Shown here: positions 3,421-59,420 of the stretch, piece by piece
Numbering within the stretch: position 1 is the first letter of the stretch
Layout: each line of letters begins with the position of its first letter
NCBI RefSeq assembly: GCF_001194135.2
Contig: NC_068995.1
Location: 34,998,404 to 35,057,933 of the forward strand
DNA from: Octopus bimaculoides
Taxonomy: Eukaryota
Length of the DNA stretch: 59,530 nucleotides
Direction of reading: 5' to 3'
Made by a program: the position numbers and the translations under genes
Notes under the pieces: model-generated
Seen by the model: the letters and a program-made list of their open reading frames with translations, nothing else
Told to the model about the DNA's origin: nothing
The model's database searches: none

Positions 3421-4344
3421 ACCACCGGTTTAGTATGCACTTCTCCGTGAAGAGTACTTAACCGTTAGCACTACACAAAAGAATCTAAGCTTGATGTAAA
3501 TAGATAGACATCAATTTAAAGTTGCATAAATCCATCAATACTATCCGGTATTTGAGCAAGATTCCCTTTCTCTACACATACTGACATCCTACATCGCATC
3601 TAGAAAAGGGTGAGTCGACCTATTGGTATAACGCCAAAACAGACACGCTGCAGTTTTAGCTAAGACTTGTGGTCTTTCCTTTCTCTAAATTTCACCCAAT
3701 AATATGAAGGCCTTTGTTCTGCTGAGTAGATTGGGTTCATTTGACTAAAACCCGGGCCTTCCAGGCCTAAAGAACTTACGTCATCTCCAAACCATTGATA
3801 TTTCTTACATACCACTCTGCACTATAATAATTACTATTGAACCATCCGTTGAATGTTGGCTATCTGGAACTCCCTCTTCGCTCATCCACTCCCTGTACGC
3901 TTGATTTGCATAGAGTCGAGAAGAACATTAACAATAGCAATTTTATTTGTATGGGACCCGCTAAAGACCAGAGGTATTCCGTTCCCCAGATACTGCAAGT
4001 AACATGGAAANNNNNNNNNNNNNNNNNNNNNNNNNNNNNNNNNNNNNNNNNNNNNNNNNNNNNNNNNNNNNNNNNNNNNNNNNNNNNNNNNNNNNNNNNN
4101 NNNNNNNNNNNNNNNNNNNNNNNNNNNNNNNNNNNNNNNNNNNNNNNNNNNNNNNNNNNNNNNNNNNNNNNNNNNNNNNNNNNNNNNNNNNNNNNNNNNN
4201 NNNNNNNNNNNNNNNNNNNNNNNNNNNNNNNNNNNNNNNNNNNNNNNNNNNNNNNNNNNNNNNNNNATATATGTATATACGTATGCATGTATGTACGTAT
4301 GTGTATATATGTATATATGTATATATGTATTTATGTACATTTGT

Positions 4345-4380
<36 letters not shown>

Positions 4381-10986: not shown

Positions 10987-11024
<38 letters not shown>

Positions 11025-11754
11025 NNNNNNNNNNNNNNNNNNNNNNNNNNNNNNNNNNNNNNNNNNNNNNNNNNNNNNNNNNNNNNNNNNNNNNNNNNNN
11101 NNNNNNNNNNNNNNNNNNNNNNNNNNNNNNNNNNNNNNNNNNNNNNNNNNNNNNNNNNNNNNNNNNNNNNNNNNNNNNNNNNNNNNNNNNNNNNNNNNNN
11201 NNNNNNNNNNNNNNNNNNNNNNNNNNNNNNNNNNNNNNNNNNNNNNNNNNNNNNNNNNNNNNNNNNNNNNNNNNNNNNNNNNNNNNNNNNNNNNNNNNNN
11301 NNNNNNNNNNNNNNNNNNNNNNNNNNNNNNNNNNNNNNNNNNNNNNNNNNNNNNNNNNNNNNNNNNNNNNNNNNNNNNNNNNNNNNNNNNNNNNNNNNNN
11401 NNNNNNNNNNNNNNNNNNNNNNNNNNNNNNNNNNNNNNNNNNNNNNNNNNNNNNNNNNNNNNNNNNNNNNNNNNNNNNNNNNNNNNNNNNNNNNNNNNNN
11501 NNNNNNNNNNNNNNNNNNNNNNNNNNNNNNNNNNNNNNNNNNNNNNNNNNNNNATATATAATGGAAAAGTAATGTAAAAATTCATTACGGAGGATATGTT
11601 ATAAATAATTAATAATTATTTATGAATATATCAATGGCTTTATAGCGATTTTGACTGGTATTTCTAAACATGTAAGGGTTTTGAAACTCTCTTAGTTATA
11701 ATTGTGACTTGTTCAATAATACAAACGTTCTTATATATATATGTATATATGCAA

Positions 11755-12360
11755 GCAATATATAAATGGGCTGATGAGAATAATATGCAGTTGAATGGCG
11801 CAGAATTACTTCGCTATTATCCAACAGATTATAGCTGAAGTGAACGGGACCAGCAGGCAATATAATCCAAGAGTTAGAGCTGGTGCGTGGCCTGGGAACG
11901 CACATGAGCAACGACGCAACTTTCCATGTGCACATTGCTCAAATAGTAACACTATGCAGACGGGTGGCAGGTTGGATACTTAGATCCTTCAGGACCAGGA
12001 ACAGAGACACAATGCTTTTGCTCTGGAGAACCTTTGTCCTCGGTTGTCTGGACTACTGCTCCCAACTGTGGTCCCCACAGAGTGTAAAACTAATTGCGGA
12101 ACTAGAAGAGATCCAATGCCACTTCACAAAGAAGATAGACGCAATAAAACACATGGGCTACTGGAAGAGATTGAAGGAACTGGGACTCTACTCCCTGGAG
12201 AGGACACGTGAGAGATATACAGTGCTATGCATTAGGAAAATAATAGAGGGTCTGGCTCCATATTTCGGAATTGAAATCTACAACAATCTCCGTACTGGAC
12301 GGCACTGCACAGTACCAAATATCCCATCTTCTCCATCGAGGATACGAATCCAATATTCTT
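11755..12360 (+). mobile_element. CR1-group LINE, RT C-terminal/thumb region (pseudogene fragment)
   Basis: IYKWADENNMQLN..ELLRY, then VRGLGTHMSND...GWILRSFRTR...LWRTFVLGCLDYCSQLWSP...LEEIQCHFTKKI...YWKRLKELGLYSLERTRERY...KIIEGLAP. This matches CR1/L2-group thumb motifs (DLG, YCSxxWSP, LYSLERRRxR). Confidence 0.9.
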
Positions 12361-12370
12361 TTCTATTCTA

Positions 12371-12430: not shown

Positions 12431-12766
12431 ATTATCTGCAATTCCAGATGAACCCATNNNNNNNNNNNNNNNNNNNNNNNNNNNNNNNNNNNNNNNNNNN
12501 NNNNNNNNNNNNNNNNNNNNNNNNNNNNNNNNNNNNNNNNNNNNNNNNNNNNNNNNNNNNNNNNNNNNNNNNNNNNNNNNNNNNNNNNNNNNNNNNNNNN
12601 NNNNNNNNNNNNNNNNNNNNNNNNNNNNNNNNNNNNNNNNNNNNNNNNNNNNNNNNNNNNNNNNNNNNNNNNNNNNNNNNNNNNNNNNNNNNNNNNNNNN
12701 NNNNNNNNNNNNNNNNNNNNNNNNNNNNNNNNNNNNNNNNNNNNNNNNNNNNNNNNNNNNNNNNNN

Positions 12767-12803
<37 letters not shown>

Positions 12804-12982
12804 TATACACATATATATATATATAAGTCAGTAACAGAACTCAAAATATAAGCGTATTCCTTAATAGTTTATAACTGAAACGCTCATAATTCCAGTGCAC
12901 TGAGTTACACGTTTCCAATCATGCAGCTGGTAATCAAAGCTTTTGAAGCACCTGCTGCTTGAATAAATATCATTTTCTATTC

Positions 12983-13174: not shown

Positions 13175-14323
13175 TACTGCCTGAATGAATATTGAATATT
13201 GTTTGAAACTATTAAGAAAACTCTCAACTTTATGTTCTATTTGAAATGCCTTACGAGCATCACATGTAAAAACGATTTGTATTTTGTATTTCATTTCAGA
13301 CGTATGGAAATACTAAAACGTCATAAACTTCATAAAAGCGACGTCGCTTTAATATCTTAATTTGTGAAATTACGTTATATAAATATCAACTGATGGGATT
13401 TTAAATGATCGTGAAAATTAACTTGGTAGCATTTCAACGTATATTCGGCTAACAGGGTACTCAAGAAGAATATACAGATATTCGCAAACTATCAACCGCT
13501 CAATATAGTAGGCAGTCCAATGTTACCTGTTGTATAATGAGAGTAAACAGCATGTAAATCCATTTATGTAAGAAGAAAACCCGCCACGTTTTGTGAGGTC
13601 TATAATAAAATAAACAAGCATGAATGGAGAGCTCAGTATATGCTACACATGTTTACATGGTTTAGCCATTTATTATTACAGTAGTTATATATAGTCACAG
13701 ACTGGTGATCCGATACAGGTGGTTGATGTTGATAAGCCACAAAAATGGTGAAATATTGGTATCCTTCATTCCTGAATTCGATAGGAGGCGAATTGCCTCG
13801 CCTGTCTTTGACTCTAAGCGTTATGAGACAGTCATCCCCAACACGTTATACCGTAGCGAACTGGTGAAAAAAAGCACATAAACTGAGTATGTGTTGTTGA
13901 TAATTTCTATAACTCTAGTACTGCTTTTAATTCGTTACTGAATTGCATTATGTATATACTGACATATGTGTGATGTGTAATGTTAAAAACGTAAAATTCA
14001 AGAAATATTCTGCGAGACACCACCAGCACCAGGAGAAATTGAACAAAATGTTTGAGCAACTGAAAGTCACAACAGGTATATTGCTACCATTGCATACTCA
14101 GAATCGAGTAACCTGTGCTTGGCAGAAACACAATGCGTCATAATATGCAATAATATCAAGCACTCTGGAACCTGGCAGAAACCTCTGATATCTAATTGTA
14201 TATCAACCATTTCTTCAATTATAAATGTATTTATCGAATTTTGAATTATTATTCTTATTATTACTATTATTATACTGATTTACACAGACACACACATATT
14301 CCTTTTTCCTTTTATTTGTTGTT

Positions 14324-20051: not shown

Positions 20052-20602
20052 TTCCCCACCATTTTACAAAAACTGAAATCATAAAAATAGTGAATAATAA
20101 GACTGTGAATAATAAAAAATAGCAATAAAATTTTATTAATTGTTGTGATAGTTGATTTATGTCGGTTGTTCAAGTTATTGCTATAGCTATTTAGACTATT
20201 AGAATGTTATATTTTGTTATCATTCGTTAGACTGTTGTGCATCACAATTCAGTTATTAATTATTTCGTCATGTGTGTTTCGTGAGATATAAAAAAAGATA
20301 TAACATAACTCCGGCTTGAAATGCAATTGACAAATGTAGTGTGGAGAGTGCCTGTGGAAGACGATGTAGATGTTTGTCATGTATATTACACTTATTTAGC
20401 AACATTTGTAGTTAAACAAATCCAACATAGGAGCAGGCATTGCTGTGTGGTTAAGATGTTCGCTTTCCAACCATGTGGCCTCGGGTTCAGTCCTACTGCG
20501 TGGTACCTTCCCCACCATTTTACAAAAACTGAAATCATAAAAATAGTGAATAGTAAAACTGTGAATTATAAAAAATAGCAATACAATTTTATTAATTGTT
20601 GT
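20052..20602 (+). repeat. Local direct duplication of about 95 bp (20052-20146 and 20508-20602)
   Basis: CCCACCATTTTACAAAAACTGAAATCATAAAAATAGTGAATA...TTTTATTAATTGTTGTG occurs twice with a handful of substitutions. Confidence 0.9.
20429..20508 (+). mobile_element. SINE family C, head-only fragment
   Basis: GCAGGCATTGCTGTGTGGTTAAGATGTTCGCTTTCCAACCATGTGGCCTCGGGTTCAGTCCTACTGCGTGGTACCTT; A- and B-box-like motifs present. Confidence 0.85.
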
Positions 20603-20737
20603 GGTAGTGGTGGGGGTTGTTATAGATGCTAATATGACCATTATGATCGAATAATCATTGTTAATTTCTAACTGGAAATGATACTTTTAGGGCATAACGT
20701 ATTCAGTAATACTCGAAGTGTATTATTTAAAATTAAG

Positions 20738-22767: not shown

Positions 22768-24149
22768 GCTTGATTAAATATATTGAAGTTATAAATAATC
22801 AGTAACTCCTCGAATTTTTATTGTGGATGCATGAACGTTTATGGTAAAACAGCTTAAGGTCAAAATCTTATTCTTTGAAATGAAAACATACATGCCTATG
22901 AATAAATATACATACTTATGAATGCAACATAACTAAAGGATATATAATGTCTAAAAGTTATTCGACAAAACCAATCATTACTCGCACTAATATTAATGCT
23001 AAATGACATAAAGATCGAAATTTTACCGAGCTACTATATATATTGATCTATTCACATGCATGTCGACATTGGTGCAGTTTGAGTAGTTACATGTAAAAAT
23101 GCATTTAAGAAATCTAACCTCAGATAAGTTTGTGTTCAATAGCATATAGAAAGTGGAGGCTTCAAAATCTTATATCAAATAATTTCAACTAATTTCTTGT
23201 GAGGTGTTCTTAAACCTACATTTAAACAACACATCAAGTGATATATATATACATATATACACATGAAGGCATACACATATAAACACACTCGCATTGATAC
23301 ATGCATACACGCACCACATCCATGCAAACACACAAAAGCACACATATACACACTCACATGTATATATATATATATATATATNNNNNNNNNNTATATATAC
23401 AGTTAATAATTATGTTGACGTACTTGTCCAGAAATATAATAATGTGTATTTACAGGCTCTATTTTATGCATTTCAGACAACTTATAATATTAGATGAAAA
23501 TGGATACCCTGTTTCAATTTTCAATTGTAACTATGCGATTTAGTATAGTAAAATCTCAAGAAGGGCTAAGATCATCTAATTTCCTTTGGTAAGTATATTT
23601 TCATTTAATTAATTATCTAAAAGTAATTATGAATAAAGAGAATTTAGTATTGGTATATTCAGAACATTATTTCTAAACTGGCTAATATACTGTATCCAAC
23701 TGGTGATAGGGTATAATAACTTCAAAATAGCATTAAACCCTCCTTCATAGTTGACTGTGGGGTTGTGTAATAAATATGGCAGATGTGTACAAATGTGTCA
23801 CGTACCTTGTACACTTGACTAATTAATTTGCGACCATATGATGATCGATGTCTTTGTGCAATATCGCACACTAAACTTTAATAAGCTTCATAATATTTTT
23901 GTAGTATGAACGCTACTGCGAGCCCATTATAAAATTGGCCACAACTTAAAATGTAAGACTTCTAGCCGCCTTCCACAGGCACTCTCCACACTACATCTGT
24001 CAATTGCAGTTCAAGCCGGAGTTATGTTATATCTTTTATATATCTCACGAAACACACACGATGAAATAATTAATAACTGAATTGTGATGCACAACAGTCT
24101 AACGAATGATAACAAAATATAATATTCTAATAGTTTAAATAGTTATAGC

Positions 24150-25150
24150 AATGACTTGAACAGCCGACATAAATCAACAACTAAAACATACTATAATAAT
24201 AAAATTGAATACAAGAAGTCTAATACAATAGGAATCAAGATTAAAAATTCTCTCCGACCATAAACACTAATTAAAATCCAAACTATTAGTTAAGAAACTG
24301 TTCTAAAGATATGGCCTGGATGATAATCCCCCTCGCTAAGCAAGTTAAGTCAAAAATACCTAGAATGTTCTATGAAACACTAGATAAATCACAATCCGGT
24401 TCTGGAACTCTAGAAATTTAGCTCAAATTATAGCCGCCCACAACAGCAAACAAATGGAAAATCACTTGACAATAACATTAATAAGTTAAAGAATGAAAAC
24501 CAAATTAAAGATAATAATAATAATAATACCAATTTTTAAAACAAAAGTAAGATGATTAATCTACATTCTATTAAAACTACCGTTGAGAAGATAAAGATCA
24601 AAGGGAAACTACTCATTTAATAATTCCATAGCTCCTATAACTAAGACACAGGCACTTAAGGTTACTAGAAAGAGTAGCGACTATTATGAAAAGAGCAACA
24701 ATTAAGATAATCAGCAAAAGTATAAAACACAACATTATAAAATCTAATAATAAAGGCGTAGATAGCTAATACATTGAAAATGTGATTGCTCTAGGAGACT
24801 GCAATGCAAATCTTGAAATAACTGTGAGGTAAGAAATACCGTCTATAGACGTGTAATCACCACAGATAAAAACAAATATTACAATATTGCGGTTAGCACA
24901 TCATTTATAGAACAAAGAATAACAAATCATGTAAGTTCATTTAGAAATAATGCTGAAAATTTACAAGCCTTAACAAGTTTATATAGTCGCTCAATGAAGA
25001 AAATATTAAATATTCATTAAAATAGGAAATTATTAGTACAGCGAAACTTCATAAAATACGGGATGAAAATGCAATTTATACCTGGAATAATTATACCAAA
25101 TATTTACTTCCAAAAATAAATTAGTTAAAACTAGACGAGAAAGAAGCATA
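24150..25150 (+). mobile_element. Penelope-like element, decayed C-terminal region with GIY-YIG endonuclease
   Basis: About 24830-25145 reads NTVYRRVITTDKNKYYNIAVSTSFIEQRITNHVSSFRN...KCNLYLE*LYQIFTSKNKLVKTRRE. This fits the PLE endonuclease pattern VY...YIG...F..R..NH.SSF...C.LC..EK..I...LLN.R.E. The upstream boundary is approximate. Confidence 0.65.
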
Positions 25151-28007: not shown

Positions 28008-28971
28008 ATATGTATATATACATATGCACACATATATAGAGATTCACGCATGCATGTGTGTGTGTGCGTATTGCGGGGTACAGTGTGGGTGAATGATTAA
28101 AACATCCACTTTGCAACCCTAAATTCTTTGGTTCGATTCCACTGAATGAAATCTTGAGTAAAATCAAATTTGTATGAACTCTCGTCGAAATATAAATCTT
28201 GAGTGAAATCGGTTAGACGGTAACTGTATAGAAGACCGACTCAAGGATTGTAACTATTATTCAAAGTTACACTCGTAGGGGATGACTTAACGTAAAGCAT
28301 GCACGTTTTTGTTGAATGTTTAGTCATTTCCACACAGATTGGTAGATCATATGCTATAGAATGTATTGCAACATTTATTCTGGTTCTTTGCACTGTAAGT
28401 TCAATTCTTATCGAAGATAACTTTTCGTTTCAAATTTTGAAGTCGATATGTAACATAGAGACTTATGATTGGGTCATATTTTCCCTCTCACAATTTTCTC
28501 CCTGGCTCTATTATGTTTTTTCTTTATGACAAAAATCACGGATAGTCAGCCACACATAAAGAATGATGGGTAGTGCCAATCTTACAAATGCCCAAATCAT
28601 AATGTAGATCACGGTGGCGTTACTACGACATACATAGGTACACATATATATGCATACGTATGCATGCATATACACACATGCAAGCATGCATACAAACATA
28701 CATAAATACATCATTATACATACATACAAAACATATGTATGTAATAAATCTGAAAATGTCTATCCTACTATCTAAATTTAGAATTCGATAATGGGTAAAT
28801 ATTGTCATTAGTTTCTCAATACGGCAGTAATTATTAAAATCAACAAAATGTAAATTGATGTATACATATATGTGTATATGTACATACATATCTACATACA
28901 TGCATGTACGCATATACACATGCGTGATCATCTTTCTTTCCTTTCAGGACTGTCCTACTAAAGACTGGACT

Positions 28972-35700: not shown

Positions 35701-37192
35701 AGTCTGAAAAGGAACGAGGGCGATGTTTTTAGTCGATTCCTGGTACCTGTGCTAAATACAAGGGATCAGTGGATTTTTAAAGGAATTATAAGTTCTTTTT
35801 CACGTGCGAAACGCATAATTTCAATTCCTTTCTTTATCGAATAGCTAAAGATAGATCGATTCAACGAAATTAATTGTGGCAATTAATATGGAAAGTGAGA
35901 TCGATGCGTAATAACCACATATTTCAAACTAGGAATACTTGCTTCCGTTTTTATGAGGTGTAGCCAATTAATTACATCCGATCTATAATTCGATAGTTTT
36001 AAAAGTGAGACGTTTATGCACATTTCAAAGTCTATTCTATCAATGATATGTTTGCTGGTTTCCCTGGTAGAAGTCTTAACAGGATTGATCTCATGTCCCT
36101 AATGGCTAGTTTACGATCGAAATCTGTCTTATGATCCTTAAGCATATGAAAAGATTCTATAAAGAATGTGTTCTATTTGGATACTTACGCAGTCTTGTAT
36201 AAGTAGATCTAAGGTTATCTTTACTAACAGCTTTGTTGATGTAATTAACCAAATTCAAGTTTCTTTTCTTGTAGTTCTTGGTAGTAGAACTGTGTGCATT
36301 TCAGCTAATATACAAAATACATAATCTTCAATCATAGATTGTATAATTAACAAGAAAATTTCAGCTTTATCTTTTACTATGACGAGCCAATGGATTGTAT
36401 ATGCCTGTAATGCTTGTATACGACAAATCAATGATTGCTCCGTTCGATCTACTAGAAATAACGCCTTTATAAGGACAAACACATTATATAAAATTTTTCT
36501 ATATATGTTTTTAAAAAGGTGGAATCATCGAATTATCATGAATGCAACAGCGTAGATAATTGATCTGTATCGTTAAGATTGCCCTGACGCTCAACAAGCA
36601 AAACTGGGGTAACAATCACATATAAGATATATCACGATGGATCGATTGTGTTAATATAGATACACCACCAGAACTACTATCTTTCCCGGCAGATTCCAGC
36701 CTAGAATTTAATAACAGCAGTCGCACGCAGGTCTACAAATGCAGTGAATAATGAGCTGTTTTCGTCAATATTATATGTAAACAAAAAAATTCATAAAATG
36801 TCCAGATACTCTCGTTTGGGTGAATTGTTACTAAGGTAGACACTAACCAGTTTCCAATCGATTGGGTTCTGAAGGAAATCTGAAACGAACGTCGATACTA
36901 ATTAAATATTCAGTTAAAAATAAAGTAGATCTCTATCATTTACTAAATATGTTTTATTTACTATACGGCACTAATGAACAGAAATAGCATCGAAATATCA
37001 ATATCCGTCGTTCTCGCTCGTCTACGGGCCAGTTTTTTCTCCTGGCTTTGAAGTATACTGTGATTTCAACACTTCACAACTTTAACTGGACCTTCCTAGG
37101 ATAAAATACGGCAGGCTAAAAGCATTTAGCAACACACATACATTAACAAACATTCAGTATATATGACATTGATAATATTTACGTTATTAATG

Positions 37193-37194
<2 letters not shown>

Positions 37195-37245
<51 letters not shown>
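37195..37245. repeat. (CA)n microsatellite
   Basis: Direct reading. Confidence 0.97.
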
Positions 37246-37249
<4 letters not shown>

Positions 37250-37298
37250 TATATACAGTATCGAACACGCAAACAGAAAGTATGTTTTCTAGTTCCAG

Positions 37299-37648
37299 GG
37301 TAGGCTGCGCTTATATGTGTAAGAGAATGCATTCTCATCAATGCACCTGGTATTAAAACACATAGAACTCAGAGACAAGCTAGATAACTCGCACTAGTTC
37401 CTACACAGGAGCGACGGATATCGGTGTACCATCATTTTTGTGACTTGTCAGCACCGGATACCCGAAAGAGGCCCGATTCAAGCTCGGGTACGCGGTGTTG
37501 CAAGTCACAAAAATGACGAAAGATCGATGTCACTCGCTCCTGAAAGGGACTTGATGCAAGTTATCTCACTTATCTATGACTTCCAGGTGCCTTAACACCA
37601 GCGCATTGATGAGAATATGTTCTCTTTCACCCATAAGTGCAGCCTACC
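37299..37648. repeat. 350-bp imperfect inverted repeat (foldback/MITE-like)
   Basis: Arms 37299-37465 and 37484-37648 with an 18-nt spacer; about 127/167 identities by manual alignment. Confidence 0.92.
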
Positions 37649-38159
37649 AACAATCTAACAAAACACATACCTTCTGTATGCGATTAAGATGTTTATATCC
37701 CTCGAGCTGCTTCTAATCCATATTTGAATTTATATATCTATGCGTGTGTGTGTATGTATGTATGTATGTATGTATGTATGTATGTATACATACATGCATA
37801 CATACATACACATAGGGTGCGATATTTGTTTAAGACATTTAATTAACAATATATTAACTAATCAGACCGATTACAATGCCCCTATTTCTTTATTATACCT
37901 CACAGTAGATTACATACTAACACAACATGTGAAAAGACATACAATCATTGTAGTTATATGTACAGAACAGTTATCTAGCAGCGGTCAAGTTTTTAAATAT
38001 CATATGATCCCTTGTAAATAAAGTTACGGCGGAATTGGAAGATTCCTACCTCAACATTTGCACTGCATGAAACGGAGAGAGAGAAAAAAATGAAAAAAAC
38101 ATTGTGTATGTTCTTATCAAGACACTACAATTCTTCTAACATGTTCAAAACGTTAGCGA

Positions 38160-40789: not shown

Positions 40790-41350
40790 CTAGTCTTAGA
40801 GTTCAAGATGGTATGAATGAGAGAGTGTGTGTGTTTGAACGGTTCTGTGTGTGTGCGTATATATGTGCTTGTGTATGTGTGCGGGGATTTTTTGAGTGGT
40901 CTTAGGATTCAGTGAAGTATTTGTGTGTGTGTGTGTGTGTGTGTGTGTACATGAGTCTGTGTATGAGTGTGTCTTATAATTAGCAGAGTGGTGTGTATAT
41001 GTGTACACATTTGTGTCTGTGTCTGTATGATTTGTATTTGTCAGGGTTCTGTGTGCGTGTGTGTGTATATGTTTGTGTATATGTCTTTGTTCATGTGTGT
41101 ATGTGTATGTCAGTGTGTGTGTGTGCGTGTGTATGTTTGTGTGTGTTGTGTTGGTCAGGGTGGTGTGTGCGTGAGCCTGAGTATATGTGTGAGTGTCTCT
41201 CCGTGTATGTTAGTCATGTTATAATTGTCCAGATGTTGTGTGTGTGTGTTTGTATACGCATGTCTGTGGGGGTGCATATGTATGTATGTGTGTGAGTGTG
41301 TATGTCTGTGTGAGTGTGTTGTATTTGTCAGGACTCGGTAGTGGGTAGTT
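40790..41350. repeat. Degenerate (TG)n-rich tract
   Basis: Direct reading; generates spurious C/V-rich ORFs. Confidence 0.92.
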
Positions 41351-41366: not shown

Positions 41367-42690
41367 TCATTCAACCCTGTTTAAAAATATACGATAGTAC
41401 AACGTTTCCTGGCTAGACAGTACTGGATGTTGCATTTTGTGTGTGACATAATTTGAGGGTGGCATTATTTGAAATTTAGGTATTGGTGTGTATCTGTAGT
41501 AAATATCAATTGTGATTCTGGTGTTGTTTTTAATTACCATTATGTCAAGAAATGATAACTGTGTATTGCTCATTTCTCTTGTGAATTTGAGACTAGGGTG
41601 TAGATTGTTGAGGTGCTGAATCCTTCCAGATTCCCTAGGGATTTATTTCAAATTAGGAAACAATCATCGAGGTATCTTTTCCACGTGTCCTCTATATGTG
41701 TTTTAAATGTCATGCCGTAGTTCTCTTCAATTGTTTTACATTGGTTTTGTTCCAAGTGTCCCAATACTGAGTTCTTGAAAACTGGAGCAAATCGCGTCCC
41801 TATAGCTGTGCCTCGAATTTGGAGGTAGTATTTTCCGTTGAAAAGGAATGTATTGTTTTCGAGGATGTGGCTGACCGCGTCCAGTATGAAGGTTACAGTA
41901 AATCTACTGCGATCACTTCTCTATGTTTTTCGACCCAATATTTTATGGCAGTAATTCCCAAACCGCGTGGAAGATTCGTATATAAGTTTACTATATCAAA
42001 ACTAACAGTGAATTAGATTCTGTTGTCTTGGGCAGATGTGACAGGAAATCGATGCCATCTCGAATGAAACTGGATATGTAACTACATATTTGTTTTAGAA
42101 TAATGTCAATGGGGTTGCTCATAGGATGTGTAGGACAGGCGTGACCAGCTATGATGGGTCTTAGTTTAAGGTTTTTTGGCTGTAGTAGTTTCGTGTATTC
42201 AATACATTGTTCCTTTATAGCGTTTTGTATTTCTTTCGTTTTGTGTATTTTAGTTAAGTTATAGAAGATGCTGGATTTCGACTCAAAATTGGTAATATAG
42301 TCCCTTTCATTAAAAGTAACAGAGTTATAATGATTTCAGACTAAATAATTGAGTTTCTTCATGATGCTGCCGTCGATATTTGAGTGCCTTTCACGTTAGA
42401 ATGTTGTATCCTTCAAATGATCTTCAGCTGAATCCCGGTAATATTCTGTATCCATTATAACAAAGGCACCCCCTTTATCCGCCTGTTTGATGACAATTGT
42501 GACGTCATTTTGAAGACGTATAAGGGCAGACTTTTCTAGTTTTGAAATGTTTGCTCTGACGATGATTTTATGCCTCAGTGGCTTTCTGGAGAGGTTTGCA
42601 ATGAACCAATCTAGATGTGTGTTTCGTCCTATTGGCGGGTTAAATTTTGATTTAATTTTCGTCAAGTATTATGCTTTCTCATTATTTTTA
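41367..42690 (-). mobile_element. Penelope-like element reverse transcriptase pseudogene
   Basis: KSKFNPP...LDWFI...NISKLEKSALIRLQND..IVIKQADKGGAFVIMD (42396-42665), LRPIIAG..CPT, GTAIGTRFAP, WKRYLDDCF (YLDD at 41663-41674) and LSFLDIMV...IDIYY. These are PLE RT motifs in the expected order. Confidence 0.92.
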
Positions 42691-45357: not shown

Positions 45358-45408
45358 ACACACAGAGACGCGCGCGTGCGCTCTCTCTCACGCACACACA
45401 TGCATATG

Positions 45409-45439
<31 letters not shown>

Positions 45440-45505
45440 GCATATATGTTTGTACGTATGTGTGTGTGTGTGTGTGTGTATGCATGTTTGTTTGTATGTA
45501 TGTAC
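45358..45505. repeat. Compound (CA)n/(TG)n microsatellite
   Basis: Direct reading. Confidence 0.9.
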
Positions 45506-51612: not shown

Positions 51613-51645
<33 letters not shown>

Positions 51646-52744
51646 TANNNNNNNNNNNNNNNNNNNNNNNNNNNNNNNNNNNNNNNNNNNNNNNNNNNNN
51701 NNNNNNNNNNNNNNNNNNNNNNNNNNNNNNNNNNNNNNNNNNNNNNNNNNNNNNNNNNNNNNNNNNNNNNNNNNNNNNNNNNNNNNNNNNNNNNNNNNNN
51801 NNNNNNNNNNNNNNNNNNNNNNNNNNNNNNNNNNNNNNNNNNNNNNNNNNNNNNNNNNNNNNNNNNNNNNNNNNNNNNNNNNNNNNNNNNNNNNNNNNNN
51901 NNNNNNNNNNNNNNNNNNNNNNNNNNNNNNNNNNNNNNNNNNNNNNNNNNNNNNNNNNNNNNNNNNNNNNNNNNNNNNNNNNNNNNNNNNNNNNNNNNNN
52001 NNNNNNNNNNNNNNNNNNNNNNNNNNNNNNNNNNNNNNNNNNNNNNNNNNNNNNNNNNNNNNNNNNNNNNNNNNNNNNNNNNNNNNNNNNNNNNNNNNNN
52101 NNNNNNNNNNNNNNNNNNNNNNNNNNNNNNNNNNNNNNNNNNNNNNNNNNNNNNNNNNNNNNNNNNNNNNNNNNNNNNNNNNNNNNNNNNNNNNNNNNNN
52201 NNNNNNNNNNNNNNNNNNNNNNNNNNNNNNNNNNNNNNNNNNNNNNNNNNNNNNNNNNNNNNNNNNNNNNNNNNNNNNNNNNNNNNNNNNNNNNNNNNNN
52301 NNNNNNNNNNNNNNNNNNNNNNTATATATGTATATATGTATTATTTATATTATTATTTCAAGTAAGTTTATCATAACCTTTTTGATGCACCTATACTCTA
52401 TACTGTTTTCTCCCCTATCCTTTCTAACTCCCTTTTTCTCCCTCTCATCGTTCTCTATCTGTTTCTCTCTCCTCATCCTTCTCTTTTTTCTGTCTCGTTG
52501 CTCACACGTGACCATCATTCATCTTTCTTTTCCTCACGTGACCTTCTTTCTTTCCTGCACGTACTTTCCAAGGCCTGGACGTCTCCTATCACTCTCTTCT
52601 ATCTTTTCGCTTTTCAAAGAAAACATTTCTCTCAGTGTTTACTATTTTACTCTCGTTCTGGTCTAACGACCCTCCATGTTTGTTATTGTTCGGTTTCCTT
52701 GTATGTCTCCGCTGTCCAGTTTTTGTTCCTAACTTTCACCCATA

Positions 52745-53009: not shown

Positions 53010-53423
53010 ACACACATANNNNNNNNNNNNNNNNNNNNNNNNNNNNNNNNNNNNNNNNNNNNNNNNNNNNNNNNNNNNNNNNNNNNNNNNNNNNNNNNNN
53101 NNNNNNNNNNNNNNNNNNNNNNNNNNNNNNNNNNNNNNNNNNNNNNNNNNNNNNNNNNNNNNNNNNNNNNNNNNNNNNNNNNNNNNNNNNNNNNNNNNNN
53201 NNNNNNNNNNNNNNNNNNNNNNNNNNNNNNNNNNNNNNNNNNNNNNNNNNNNNNNNNNNNNNNNNNGGTGGTAAATATAGTTCACAATGATGATGGGTTA
53301 CTATCTAGAAGCCGTAGGACATTAGGAAAGATTAAATTATCTAAATGTGAACACGCAAAGTGTAATGTTAATGCTCAACCAACACATGTCCTTTTTTAAT
53401 CATAGAGATAGATATCAAATGAC

Positions 53424-54330
53424 ATGGCTTCAACGAGAGGATGCAAAAATGATCCTAACTTATTTTGCTATACATGCGGCGAGTTCACATCGAAAGCTAA
53501 CAGGAAACTGATATCTGATTTTTACAAGAAAGTCTATCGTGCTTACTTTCACGTCAAACTTGGTGATCAGGACAAATCATGGGTCCCTCACATTGTTTGC
53601 AAGACCTGTTTGGAACACATGAGACAGTGGACTTCAGGTTCCCGAAAATCGCTGAGATTCGCTATTCCTATGATCTGGCATGAGCCAAAGAACCACTCTG
53701 ACGAATGATACTTCTGCTCAGTCAGTGTTGCGGGACTGAACCAAAAGAAACGCAGATTTATCGACTATCTCAGTCTTCATTCCGCTATTCGACCAGTGCC
53801 GCATTCAAACGATTTGCTAATCCCAGTTTTTCACGAAAATTTGTTGAAACTTGTTGAAAGTGATGAGTCAGATACTGATGTAAATGAGAAACACAGCGAA
53901 AGCGATCTTGACTATGTTCCCGAAACCGTAACAGAGCCGTTTAACCAAAATGAGCTGAATGGTTTGGTTCGAGACTTAAATTTAAGCAAAGAATCAGCAG
54001 AACTTTTGGCCTCAACGAAAATCACCTGTTAGCAAAAGGCACAACGGTAACATTCTATCGAAATAGGGAAGCTGAATTTGTACCAATCTTTAATGAAAAC
54101 ACGGATCTTGTTCATTGCATGTCGTTGAGACGTTCTTCTCCGACTAGGCGTTCACAAATACGATACTGATGAATGTAGATTGTTCATTGATAGTTCAAAA
54201 CGTAGTCTTAAATGTGTTTTGCTCCATAATACCAACATGTATGTGCCAGTACCTATGGGTCATTCAACAACACTGAAAGAAAAACATGATGTCATCAAAC
54301 AGGTATGGAACAGATTGACAACATCAAATA
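53424..54330 (+). mobile_element. Chapaev3-type (CMC superfamily) transposase pseudogene, 3' truncated
   Basis: FCYTCGE...KLGDQDKSWVPHIVCKTC...W...IWHEPKNHSDE*YFC...SAIRPVPHS...FNQNELNGLVRDLNLSKESAELLAS...TFYRNR...RLFIDSSKRSLKCVLLHN...GHST. N-terminal Cys/His zinc-binding region plus the start of the catalytic region as I recall them for Chapaev3. Confidence 0.8.
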
Positions 54331-54351
54331 CAAGTGAATGTTATGGGTCGA

Positions 54352-54363
54352 GCACACACACTC

Positions 54364-54418
<55 letters not shown>

Positions 54419-54682
54419 CTTCAACTTAAATGAAGAGAGAAATAGGTATATATAGATGGATAGATAGACAGACGGACAGATAGATTGATAGATAGACAGA
54501 CAGACAAACAGGCAGACTGACAGACAGATAGATAGAAACAAAGGCAGACAGACAGATAAATAGATGGATAGAGAGAGAGAGAGGGGGAGAGAGAAGGGAG
54601 ATAGAGAAAGAGAGAGAGACAGGTAGACAGAGAGACAGACAGGTATAGATAGATAGATATGTACGCACACACACACATACAT
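54352..54682. repeat. Compound (CA)n/(TA)n/(GATA,GACA)n/(GA)n microsatellite
   Basis: Direct reading; truncates the Chapaev remnant. Confidence 0.95.
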
Positions 54683-58248: not shown

Positions 58249-58659
58249 AGATGTTGCACATAAACAACTTTCTTAGATCCAAACACATTGTACATTTATA
58301 ACCAAAGCCGTATTGCCAAATTGCGTTTGTGGTGTTATGAAAACTATCGATCAATTAACGAACCAGCTGCATTACTTTATTAGAGACTAGCTTAAAAGCT
58401 ATCCCGTTTGTATTTGATAAGACGTTAAGGATGGATGAGAATTAATTCTCTAATGCAATCATTCTATTGTTCCAGTCCCAAGTTGAATTCCAACTGTCGA
58501 CCAATTTGTCCCAAATTTCATATCTGGACGTAAAATTAACGAAGCGACTGTCATTTACCTCCCCCCCTCATCTCTGACGTCATCTGACAAACGCCAAGCA
58601 CGATGGCGTCAATTAACCATGCTTTACCTACTAGAAGTCGCAACCCAGATACCTTTAAA

Positions 58660-59317: not shown

Positions 59318-59420
59318 TATAGATGTTTTCGATCTAGTTTGGATTCTTTGCCATCAAATTTGAATTCTTTGCAATCAAATTTGATGGCAAAGAATCCAAA
59401 CTAGATCGAAAACGTCTATA
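59318..59420. repeat. Near-perfect inverted repeat, 46-bp arms with 11-nt spacer
   Basis: 59318-59363 versus the reverse complement of 59375-59420: 45/46 identical. Confidence 0.97.

What the first reader, a model, noticed from the sequence alone, without database searches (positions are those of the whole stretch)
37299..37648. 350-bp foldback element with nested palindromes
Seen: arms of 167 and 165 bp, about 76% identical by hand alignment, around an 18-nt spacer. Perfect blocks remain (GGTAGGCTGC, ATTCTCATCAATGC, TCATTTTTGTGACTTG, TACCCGA). The left arm contains its own 14-bp palindrome GAGAATGCATTCTC. It is GC-richer than its flanks, non-coding, has no clear target duplication, and matches no family I recognise. 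Inference: an old all-TIR MITE. If transcribed it would form a long imperfect dsRNA; established: such duplexes are ADAR substrates and coleoids edit RNA extensively. It could also be a small-RNA source or an exapted element.
Basis: partly seen in the sequence, partly recalled or inferred. Interest (0 to 1): 0.7.

Follow-up and report, generated by a model that had tools for sequence, protein, structure and literature searches.

The report
Head-to-head pair of an old interspersed repeat
The 350-bp hairpin-forming stretch is real, but it is the core of two decayed copies of a roughly 300-bp tailed repeat lying head-to-head, which is an ordinary genomic fossil and not a self-contained "all-inverted-repeat" transposon.

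Summary
Window 37299-37648 has arms of 167 and 165 nt that are 77% identical, an 18-nt spacer, and a predicted fold of -188/-207 kcal/mol (z about -20).

The boundaries and the MITE reading do not hold. The inverted homology runs outward on both sides to microsatellites: (CA)n at 37194-37245 and (TG)n(TATG)n at 37744-37812.

A solo relative with no inverted partner lies at 13709-13982 (nhmmer E = 8e-12). A weaker relic lies at about 36960-37190. Both run from the same head (TCGGGTA...) to the same TG-type tail. So the repeated unit is one arm plus its tail, not the palindrome.

The inverted repeat ends at the unit's head (inside) and at its tail (outside). The locus is therefore best read as two unit copies head-to-head, 18 bp apart, like an inverted Alu pair. 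The anatomy is retroposon- or SINE-like, but no pol III boxes, TSDs or partner LINE could be shown.

Nothing points to selection:
- Perfect blocks of at least 16 nt are expected at 77% identity.
- The 14-nt palindrome occurs at chance frequency.
- Transitions show no strand bias.

If transcribed, it would meet published criteria for an ADAR substrate. Expression, copy number and taxon could not be tested. Interest is low.

The parts
37299..37465 (-). It is the 5' 167 nt (head and body) of unit copy U_L, whose sense strand is the minus strand.
   Evidence: Global alignment with the right arm is 77% identical. nhmmer E = 2.5e-56 to the arm profile.
37466..37483 (.). 18-nt spacer (AAGAGGCCCGATTCAAGC) between the two heads. 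It is not part of the repeat family and forms the loop of the hairpin.
   Evidence: The inverted homology stops at TACCCGA/TCGGGTA. The solo copy U_3 shows no homology to the spacer upstream of its head.
37484..37648 (+). It is the 5' 165 nt of unit copy U_R (sense on the plus strand).
37194..37465 (-). Full unit copy U_L: head at 37465, body, and a (CA)n run at 37194-37245, which reads as a (TG)n tail on the sense strand. It lacks a ~41-nt segment present in U_R, U_3 and U_4.
   Evidence: Three- and four-way alignments. nhmmer E = 3.9e-65 to the extended profile.
37484..37812 (+). Full unit copy U_R: head TCGGGTA at 37484, body to about 37743, and a (TG)5(TATG)n tail followed by (CATA)n at 37744-37812.
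   Evidence: E = 4.4e-79. No significant homology beyond the microsatellite.
13709..13982 (+). Solo, older family copy U_3. It has the same head (TCCGATAC...), a colinear body and a degenerate TG-rich tail, and no inverted partner.
   Evidence: Local alignment score 65 against a null of 24 +/- 3. nhmmer E = 7.9e-12 with a profile built only from the two arms. No inverted repeat nearby, fold z = -1.7. K2P about 0.6 to U_L and U_R.
36960..37190 (+). Probable very old relic U_4 of the same family. It is colinear with the unit and lies tail-to-tail against U_L.
   Evidence: nhmmer E = 1.3e-3 for 36978-37057. Colinear four-way alignment including GGCAGGCTA...ACACATAC. Pairwise scores are only at the upper edge of the null, so this part is tentative.
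37323..37336 (.). 14-nt perfect palindrome GAGAATGCATTCTC inside the left arm.
   Evidence: The frequency is at chance expectation. The right-arm homologue GAGAATATGTTCTC is imperfect and U_3 has none.

Best explanation
The locus is a head-to-head (5'-to-5') pair of two decayed copies of an interspersed repeat about 270-330 nt long. The repeat has a fixed 5' end (TCGGGTA...) and a 3' (TG)n/(TGTA)n microsatellite tail, which is the anatomy of a LINE-dependent retroposon (SINE-like). The copies are separated by 18 bp of unrelated DNA.

Shown:
- The unit, not the palindrome, is the repeated entity.
- The inverted repeat begins at the unit's head and ends at its tail.
- The arms differ by K2P about 0.25, in a neutral-looking pattern.

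Inferred:
- The pair arose in one of two ways. Either two insertions occurred close together, or a single event made an inverted dimer (for example replication of a snap-back, hairpin-ended cDNA, or a very local inverted duplication). The second route is favoured by the clustering of family copies.
- It has since decayed without selection.
- Its only likely 'activity' is passive. If a transcript runs through it, the RNA folds into an imperfect duplex of about 165-220 bp with an 18-nt loop. This is the same kind of substrate as inverted Alu pairs, which ADAR hyper-edits.
For: - Solo relative: the copy at 13709-13982 is found with a profile built only from the two arms (E = 7.9e-12). It has no inverted partner.
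- Extended homology: the three copies share homology beyond GCAGCCTACC, through a common segment, to a TG-type microsatellite. Extended-profile E-values are 4e-79, 1e-66 and 4e-65.
- Limits of homology: it stops at the microsatellites and at TCGGGTA. There it coincides within 1-2 nt with the 5' limit of the solo copy.
- Orientation: a T5 run is conserved on the antisense strand, but no conserved T>=4 run occurs on the sense strand. This is compatible with pol III transcription in the head-to-tail sense.
- Fourth relic: it lies adjacent at about 36960-37190. Three of the four copies fall within about 850 bp (P about 0.0025 under uniform placement).
- Neutral decay: 20 transitions, 14 transversions and 4 gap columns; G.U-preserving transitions are 7 (+) against 13 (-), p = 0.26. 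Perfect blocks and the nested palindrome are at chance expectation.
- Fold: the extended fold is -216 kcal/mol, z = -15.
- Literature: neighbouring inverted repeats are the main source of hyper-edited dsRNA in Metazoa (PMC5625713). SINEs make up about 11.6% of an octopus genome, while annotated MITEs are few (PMC13282606).
Against: - Only four copies were available, one of them weak, and all come from one 59.5-kb window. No genome of this organism was reachable, so copy number and consensus ends are unknown.
- No A/B boxes appear above chance, and there is no tRNA, 5S or 7SL similarity. However, no tRNA-like head was detected anywhere in the window, so this negative result is weak.
- No TSDs flank any unit.
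- No partner LINE with a matching 3' end was found. The only LINE 3' end in the window runs into an N gap.
- A head-to-head pair with heads no more than 30 bp apart is unlikely for random insertion at the observed density (P about 0.002 per window). So a purely 'two independent insertions' origin needs either selection bias from the scan or a mechanism.
- U_L and U_R are not independent witnesses of the 5' boundary if the palindrome moved as one piece.
Confidence: 0.6

Rival explanations
1. It is a genuine foldback or long-TIR non-autonomous DNA transposon. The whole palindrome (about 37194-37812, larger than the reader thought) is the mobile unit. The solo copies at 13.7 kb and 36.96 kb are half-elements left by deletion of one arm.
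For: - The structure is a near-complete palindrome with co-extensive arms and a short loop.
- Long hairpins are prone to deletion, so half-elements are expected.
- Palindromic MITEs exist and are heavily edited, for example the palindromic Harbinger repeat in Xenopus (PMC5625713).
- No retroposon hallmark (pol III boxes, TSD, partner LINE) could be shown.
Against: - The 5' limit of the solo copy coincides within 1-2 nt with the arm/loop junction. This would require a deletion breakpoint exactly at that junction.
- The outer ends are microsatellites with no shared terminal sequence beyond them. That is unlike transposase-recognised termini.
- There is no TSD at either candidate boundary.
- No second palindromic copy exists in the window.
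Confidence: 0.2
2. It is a local DNA-level inverted duplication of one pre-existing repeat copy, for example by replication template switching or hairpin-capped break repair. No transposition of the second copy was involved.
For: - The arms are each other's closest relatives by far (K2P 0.25-0.32, against about 0.6 to U_3).
- The spacer is very short (18 nt), which is typical of such events.
- The family copies cluster locally.
Against: - The duplicated segment would have to begin exactly at the unit's head and end within its tail. No flanking non-repeat DNA is duplicated on either side.
- A random segmental inverted duplication would normally carry some flank.
Confidence: 0.12
3. It is a functional hairpin RNA locus: an hpRNA, endo-siRNA or miRNA-like precursor, or a selected ADAR-binding structure, exapted from the repeat.
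For: - The predicted hairpin is very stable (z about -20).
- The centre of the hairpin gives a weak hit to the mir-153 model and shares GUCAUUUUUGUGA / UCACAAAA.UGAU with it.
- That block is also the best-conserved part across all family copies.
Against: - The mir-153 score is 26 bits, against a gathering score of 54. Unrelated models (mir-9223 at 27 bits, mir-19 at 21) score alike on the same hairpin.
- The position corresponding to the 3p seed carries a deletion.
- The stem between the miRNA-like blocks is 55 nt, not about 28.
- The solo unit carries the same block without any hairpin.
- 23% of stem positions are mismatched, with no strand bias towards G.U.
- There is no Rfam hit at gathering threshold.
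Confidence: 0.04

Closest known systems
Inverted Alu (IRAlu) and other neighbouring inverted SINE pairs, the main ADAR hyper-editing substrates in Metazoa (Porath et al. 2017, PMC5625713)
   Same: Two copies of one short interspersed repeat lie in opposite orientation and close together. They form a long imperfect intramolecular duplex if co-transcribed. The 77% identity exceeds the paper's dsRNA criterion of at least 65% over at least 80% of the length.
   Different: - The spacing is only 18 bp and exactly head-to-head, which is much tighter than typical pairs.
- The repeat family is unidentified, and its SINE status (pol III head, partner LINE) is unproven.
- Transcription and editing are untested.
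Palindromic MITEs, e.g. the ~200-bp palindromic Harbinger repeat of Xenopus tropicalis (PMC5625713), and Drosophila Foldback (FB) elements (own knowledge)
   Same: A single locus folds on itself with a short loop, is non-coding, and is a few hundred bp long.
   Different: - Here the repeated unit is the half, not the palindrome.
- There is no TSD, and the outer ends are microsatellite tails.
- FB arms are built of tandem subrepeats. These arms are unique sequence except for the terminal microsatellite.
SINEs and LINE 3' fragments with simple-repeat tails recognised by a partner LINE (Ohshima & Okada model, summarised in PMC4824008); octopus SINE families OR1/OR2/OK and squid/cuttlefish Ceph-SINEs
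   Same: Length of about 300 nt, a fixed 5' end, a simple-repeat 3' tail, dispersed copies of different ages, and no coding capacity.
   Different: - No tRNA-like head or A/B boxes were detected.
- No shared LINE tail was found.
- Consensus sequences of the named cephalopod families were not available, so relatedness could not be tested.
mir-153 precursor (Rfam RF00650)
   Same: It shares a 13-nt block and its complement at the hairpin centre.
   Different: - It scores 26 bits against a gathering score of 54.
- The loop region is 55 nt, not 28.
- The seed region carries a deletion.
- Other miRNA models score equally on the same hairpin.
- The block is part of a dispersed repeat.

Membership tests
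MITE / all-TIR foldback DNA transposon | Terminal inverted repeats that end at defined, conserved element termini | tested here: not met
   The inverted homology does not stop at 37299/37648. It runs out to (CA)n at 37194-37245 and (TG/TATG)n at 37744-37812, with no shared sequence beyond.
MITE / all-TIR foldback DNA transposon | Target-site duplication flanking the element | tested here: not met
   There is no direct repeat at 37298|37649, and none outside the microsatellites. The element is old, so loss by decay is possible.
MITE / all-TIR foldback DNA transposon | The whole palindrome is the repeated (mobile) unit | tested here: not met
   The other copies in the window are solo units: 13709-13982, with no inverted partner, and about 36960-37190. 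A genome-wide census is not possible with these tools.
MITE / all-TIR foldback DNA transposon | A related autonomous transposon with the same termini | not testable with these tools
   No genome of the source organism is in any searchable collection.
SINE / LINE-dependent non-autonomous retroposon | Fixed 5' end shared by copies | tested here: met
   U_R and U_L start TCGGGTA and U_3 starts TCCGATA. Homology is lost immediately upstream in all three. The sample is only three copies, two of which may not be independent.
SINE / LINE-dependent non-autonomous retroposon | 3' simple-repeat or A-rich tail | tested here: met
   U_L has (TG)n, U_R has (TG)5(TATG)n, and U_3 has a degenerate TG-rich run. 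All are preceded by TGTATATATAC-like sequence.
SINE / LINE-dependent non-autonomous retroposon | Head derived from tRNA, 5S or 7SL with internal pol III A and B boxes | tested here: inconclusive
   The best A/B-box matches are at chance level. There is no tRNA, 5S or 7SL hit at a permissive Rfam threshold. However, no tRNA-like head was detected anywhere in the window, and the copies are old.
SINE / LINE-dependent non-autonomous retroposon | Target-site duplications around each copy | tested here: not met
   The longest word shared between 5' and 3' flanks is no more than 5 nt for all three copies.
SINE / LINE-dependent non-autonomous retroposon | 3' region shared with a partner LINE | tested here: inconclusive
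   The unit profile finds nothing near the LINE RT tail at 11844-12368, whose 3' end runs into an N gap at 12458. Other LINEs of the genome are not available.
Inverted-repeat dsRNA substrate of ADAR (IRAlu-like) | Two similar repeat copies in opposite orientation, with at least 65% identity over at least 80% of their length, close together | tested here: met
   77% identity over 168 columns with an 18-nt spacer. The criterion is as stated in PMC5625713.
Inverted-repeat dsRNA substrate of ADAR (IRAlu-like) | Both copies lie in one transcript, and A-to-G clusters appear in RNA reads | not testable with these tools
   No RNA-seq data are available. No exon or gene was recognised within several kb.
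Helitron / Helentron-derived element | 5' TC and 3' CTRR ends with a subterminal hairpin, and insertion between A and T | tested here: not met
   The units start with TC, but the preceding base is C, T and A in the three copies. No CTRR or hairpin end was found at or after the tail.
mir-153 (RF00650) | Reaches the family's gathering score; conserved mature 3p sequence | tested here: not met
   It scores 26 bits against a gathering score of 54. The region corresponding to the seed has a deletion, and the loop region is 55 nt, not 28.

The most novel reading that the evidence does not exclude
The repeat family habitually inserts as ready-made head-to-head dimers, for example through snap-back self-priming of the cDNA during target-primed reverse transcription. 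That would seed the genome with short-loop hairpins. It would help explain why octopus-type genomes have an exceptionally high density of long dsRNA-forming loci and of hyper-editing (PMC5625713). This locus would then be one decayed example that is still an ADAR or small-RNA substrate when transcribed.
Probability: 0.07. Interest if true: 0.5.

Novelty: new member of a known kind. Interest (0 to 1): 0.15.

Why it matters
It matters little on its own. Neighbouring inverted copies of short interspersed repeats are the commonest source of long hairpin RNA in animal genomes and are already known as the main ADAR hyper-editing substrates.

The useful outcome is a correction. The feature is not a novel 350-bp all-TIR MITE. 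It is a pair of tailed repeat units whose true extent is about 620 bp.

One thing could be of wider interest. If a genome-wide census showed that this family is systematically found as tight head-to-head dimers, that would imply a dimer-forming insertion mechanism and a built-in source of dsRNA.

Tried and rejected
1. Exact-ORF look-ups of window ORFs in public assemblies found nothing on record.
2. A degenerate DNA pattern shared by all three copies was scanned in three collections. The metagenome scan gave two chance hits in bacterial coding sequence. The prokaryote genome scan gave one chance hit in a Treponema MAG. The viral scan gave none.
3. A protein-space probe with the 65-aa stop-free translation of the element found no candidate.
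4. I tried to use relatives of the window's LINE tail to reach related eukaryotic contigs. The loci L003 and L004 (GC 40.6%) carry APE+RT LINEs but no copy of the family.
5. Taxon identification through the RT tail and a transposon-like ORF failed. The best identities were 69% and 66%, and named hits come from spider, hagfish and a hemipteran, so the taxon is not confirmed.
6. Pfam on ten ORF fragments gave only a sub-threshold zf-AD hit.
7. The idea that the microsatellite is internal, with the unit continuing beyond it, was rejected. Post-microsatellite similarity is at null level for 300-nt flanks and marginal for one pair of 70-nt flanks (P = 0.004 by shuffles, 0.035 against real sequence). 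The motif is better explained as part of relic U_4.
8. A tRNA, 5S or 7SL origin was not detected.
9. mir-153 homology was rejected as a generic hairpin score plus a short resemblance.
10. The similar palindrome at 58437 has no significant surrounding homology and no inverted structure.
11. A literature search for the conserved blocks as printed sequence found no papers.

Full report
**1. The observation**

The sequence at 37299-37648 is as described.
- A global alignment of the left arm (37299-37465) with the reverse complement of the right arm (37484-37648) gives 130 identical columns of 168 (77%) and 4 gap columns. The score is 138, against -108 +/- 13 for shuffled arms.
- The spacer is 18 nt.
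- As RNA, the 350 nt fold into one long imperfect hairpin. The energy is -188 kcal/mol on the + strand and -207 on the - strand, with z-scores of -19.4 and -20.5 against dinucleotide shuffles.
- GC is 46%, against 34-37% in the flanks and 32.5% in the window.
- The longest ORF is 51 aa, and the longest stop-free stretch is 65 aa with no homologue.
- There is no Rfam match at gathering threshold and no tRNA anywhere in the window.

So the foldback is real and far beyond chance.

**2. Supporting details that do not carry weight**

- Perfect blocks: at 77% identity over 168 columns, the mean longest perfect run is 16 nt, and 46% of simulations reach 16. The quoted blocks therefore say nothing about constraint.
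- The 14-nt palindrome GAGAATGCATTCTC (37323-37336): about 6.5 such palindromes are expected in a window of this composition, and 5 non-microsatellite ones are seen. The homologous site in the right arm is imperfect, and the solo copy has none.
- Arm differences: there are 20 transitions, 14 transversions and 4 gap columns, and 7 of 34 substitutions touch a CpG.
- Strand bias: transitions that would keep a G.U pair number 7 on the + strand and 13 on the - strand (binomial p = 0.26). There is no sign that a hairpin on either strand has been preserved.
- Arm divergence is K2P 0.25.

**3. The arm is a member of a dispersed repeat, and the unit is longer than the arm**

A local alignment of the left arm against the window found a relative on the minus strand at about 13727-13830. 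Its score was 65, against a real-sequence null of 24 +/- 3 with a maximum of 33. A profile built only from the two arms finds it with E = 7.9e-12.

It continues through A.AAA..ACATAC.TTCTGT.TGCG. It then passes through a ~41-nt segment shared by the right copy and the solo copy but deleted in the left copy. It ends in a TGTATATATAC-like motif followed by a TG-type microsatellite in all three copies:
- (CA)n at 37194-37245, which reads as (TG)n on the sense strand of the left copy;
- (TG)5(TATG)n at 37744-37812 in the right copy;
- a degenerate TG-rich run at about 13964-13982 in the solo copy.

With the extended profile the three copies score E = 4e-79, 1e-66 and 4e-65. A fourth, weak relic appears at 36978-37057 (E = 1.3e-3). 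A four-way alignment suggests this relic is colinear over about 36960-37190.

Beyond the microsatellites there is no significant similarity. One marginal short motif is better explained as part of the fourth relic.

On the loop side, homology of the solo copy ends at TCCGATAC (13709). This corresponds, within 1-2 nt, to TCGGGTA at the inner ends of both arms. Nothing upstream resembles the 18-nt spacer.

The solo copy has no inverted partner within +/-600 nt, and its region does not fold better than shuffles (z = -1.7).

**4. What this means for the anatomy**

The repeated entity is a unit of about 270-330 nt with a fixed 5' end and a simple-repeat 3' tail. The 'foldback' consists of two such units, U_L (37194-37465, minus strand) and U_R (37484-37812, plus strand). 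Their 5' ends face each other across 18 bp and their tails point outward. The real inverted structure therefore spans about 620 bp.

Folding 37247-37745 extends the stem by about 35 further pairs on each side and gives -216 kcal/mol (z = -15).

Both limits of the inverted repeat coincide with limits of the family unit.
- This is what one expects of two unit copies, or of a dimer made from one unit.
- It is not what one expects of a segmental inverted duplication, which would carry some flank.
- It is also not what one expects of a foldback transposon, whose half-copies would have arbitrary breakpoints and whose outer ends would be specific transposase-binding sequences and not microsatellites.

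**5. Which class of repeat?**

A fixed head plus a simple-repeat tail is the anatomy of a SINE or other LINE-dependent retroposon (model summarised in PMC4824008).

One further detail fits. The antisense strand carries a T5 run (CATTTTTGTG) conserved in all copies, while the sense strand has no conserved T>=4 run. This is compatible with pol III transcription from head to tail.

The other defining features could not be shown:
- A- and B-box matches are at chance level.
- No tRNA, 5S or 7SL similarity appears even at a permissive Rfam threshold.
- No TSDs flank any copy.
- No LINE 3' end in the window resembles the unit. The only LINE tail, at 11844-12368, runs into an N gap.

The same permissive Rfam scan found no tRNA-like head anywhere in the window, so the negative head result is weak.

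Helitron-type ends are not present.

I therefore call the unit 'SINE-like' by anatomy only, and I do not file it in any named family. Consensus sequences of octopus OR1/OR2/OK or of Ceph-SINEs were not available.

**6. How the pair arose**

Three of the four family copies lie within about 850 bp, in + - + orientation. Under uniform placement of four copies in the window this has P of about 0.0025. A head-to-head pair with heads no more than 30 bp apart has P of about 0.002.

Selection by the first-stage reader inflates such coincidences. At a density of one copy per about 14 kb, a large genome would contain some chance pairs. Still, a local mechanism is plausible. Candidates are an insertion preference near existing copies, a very local inverted duplication bounded by the unit, or formation of an inverted dimer in a single retroposition event (replication of a snap-back cDNA). 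The data cannot separate these.

U_L and U_R are much closer to each other (K2P 0.25-0.32) than to U_3 (about 0.6). That fits either a common young subfamily or a single event.

**7. Function**

Nothing indicates a selected function.

The centre of the hairpin gives a weak hit to the mir-153 model (26 bits, gathering score 54) and shares GUCAUUUUUGUGA and UCACAAAA.UGAU with it. Against an orthologue:
- mir-9223 and mir-19 models score alike on the same hairpin;
- the loop region is 55 nt and not 28;
- the seed region has a deletion;
- the same block sits in the solo, non-hairpin copy.

The likely consequence of the structure is passive. If a transcript covers it, the RNA meets the criterion used by Porath et al. 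for putative long dsRNA (at least 65% identity over at least 80% of the length). That study found:
- most hyper-editing in Metazoa lies in such structures;
- these are mostly formed by neighbouring inverted repeats;
- octopus has an exceptionally high density of them (PMC5625713).

Whether this locus is transcribed is unknown. No exon or host gene was recognised nearby. The recognisable coding remnants in the window are transposon-derived.

**8. Context and limits**

The window is a draft animal assembly: 14 N gaps, dense microsatellites and 32.5% GC.

No tool confirmed that it is from a coleoid.
- The LINE tail has at best 69% identity to public sequences.
- The transposon-like ORF at 53412-54452 belongs to a family found across animals.
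- From my own knowledge, some peptide-like translations in the window resemble abundant octopus SINEs. This is a recollection, not a test.

No collection reachable here holds the source genome. Copy number, consensus ends, orthologues and expression could therefore not be examined.

**9. Verdict**

The feature is real but ordinary. It is a decayed head-to-head pair of an unclassified, SINE-like tailed repeat, wider than reported, with no sign of selection. It is a new instance of a well-known kind, the inverted repeat pair that is a potential dsRNA source. The MITE interpretation is not supported. The ADAR-substrate idea is plausible in principle but untested.

Noticed in passing
window 20129-20363 and 23967-24206: A second, younger inverted pair: 241 nt at 90% identity with 3.6 kb between the arms. 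These are the only two copies in the window, plus a 51-nt direct repeat at 20558-20608. It looks like the terminal inverted repeats of a ~4.1-kb element, and it gives no Rfam hit.
   Followed up: partly
window 36960-37812: Three copies of the same repeat family (U_4 +, U_L -, U_R +) are packed into about 850 bp, while only one other copy exists in the remaining ~58 kb. P is about 0.0025 under uniform placement. This suggests an insertion preference or a local rearrangement.
   Followed up: partly
window 37425-37523: The hairpin centre shares a 13-nt block and its complement with the mir-153 precursor model (26 bits, gathering score 54). Other miRNA models score equally, so this is judged a generic hairpin score plus a short chance resemblance.
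   Followed up: yes
window 37741-37816, 45404-45487, 4271-4360, 28643-28925, 59318-59420: Palindromic TG/CA/TA-type microsatellites give sub-threshold hits to repeat-derived miRNA models (mir-297, mir-466, mir-3149, MIR7533 and others). All are well below their gathering scores.
   Followed up: no
window 11844-12368 (+): This is the C-terminal tail of a non-LTR retrotransposon ORF. Its best public relative is 69% identical. More distant relatives sit downstream of APE endonuclease and RVT_1 ORFs on megabase-scale eukaryotic contigs of ENA sample ERZ26052378 (L003, L004). The 3' end of this copy runs into an N gap at 12458.
   Followed up: partly
window 53412-54452 (+): A decayed ORF in one frame with in-frame stops, starting with a Cys-rich region (weak zf-AD hit). 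It has 148 relatives at E <= 1e-8, including unnamed proteins of a spider, a hagfish and a hemipteran, so it is a widespread animal transposon-type protein.
   Followed up: partly
window 41370-42668 (-): Four consecutive ORF fragments whose sequence looks like a reverse-transcriptase-bearing element (my reading of motifs such as FLFNGKYYLQIRGTAIGTRFAP). None gave a Pfam hit at E <= 0.01. A long CA/TG-rich low-complexity tract follows at 40799-41292.
   Followed up: no
window 58431-58455: The 14-nt palindrome GAGAATTAATTCTC is nearly identical to the element's GAGAATGCATTCTC. The surrounding similarity is not significant and there is no inverted repeat nearby.
   Followed up: yes
window-wide: There are 14 runs of N (3352 nt in all), most of them next to microsatellites. 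They create spurious 'perfect' inverted and direct repeats in repeat finders (for example 51625-52341, and 10992-11339 with 12458-12805).
   Followed up: yes
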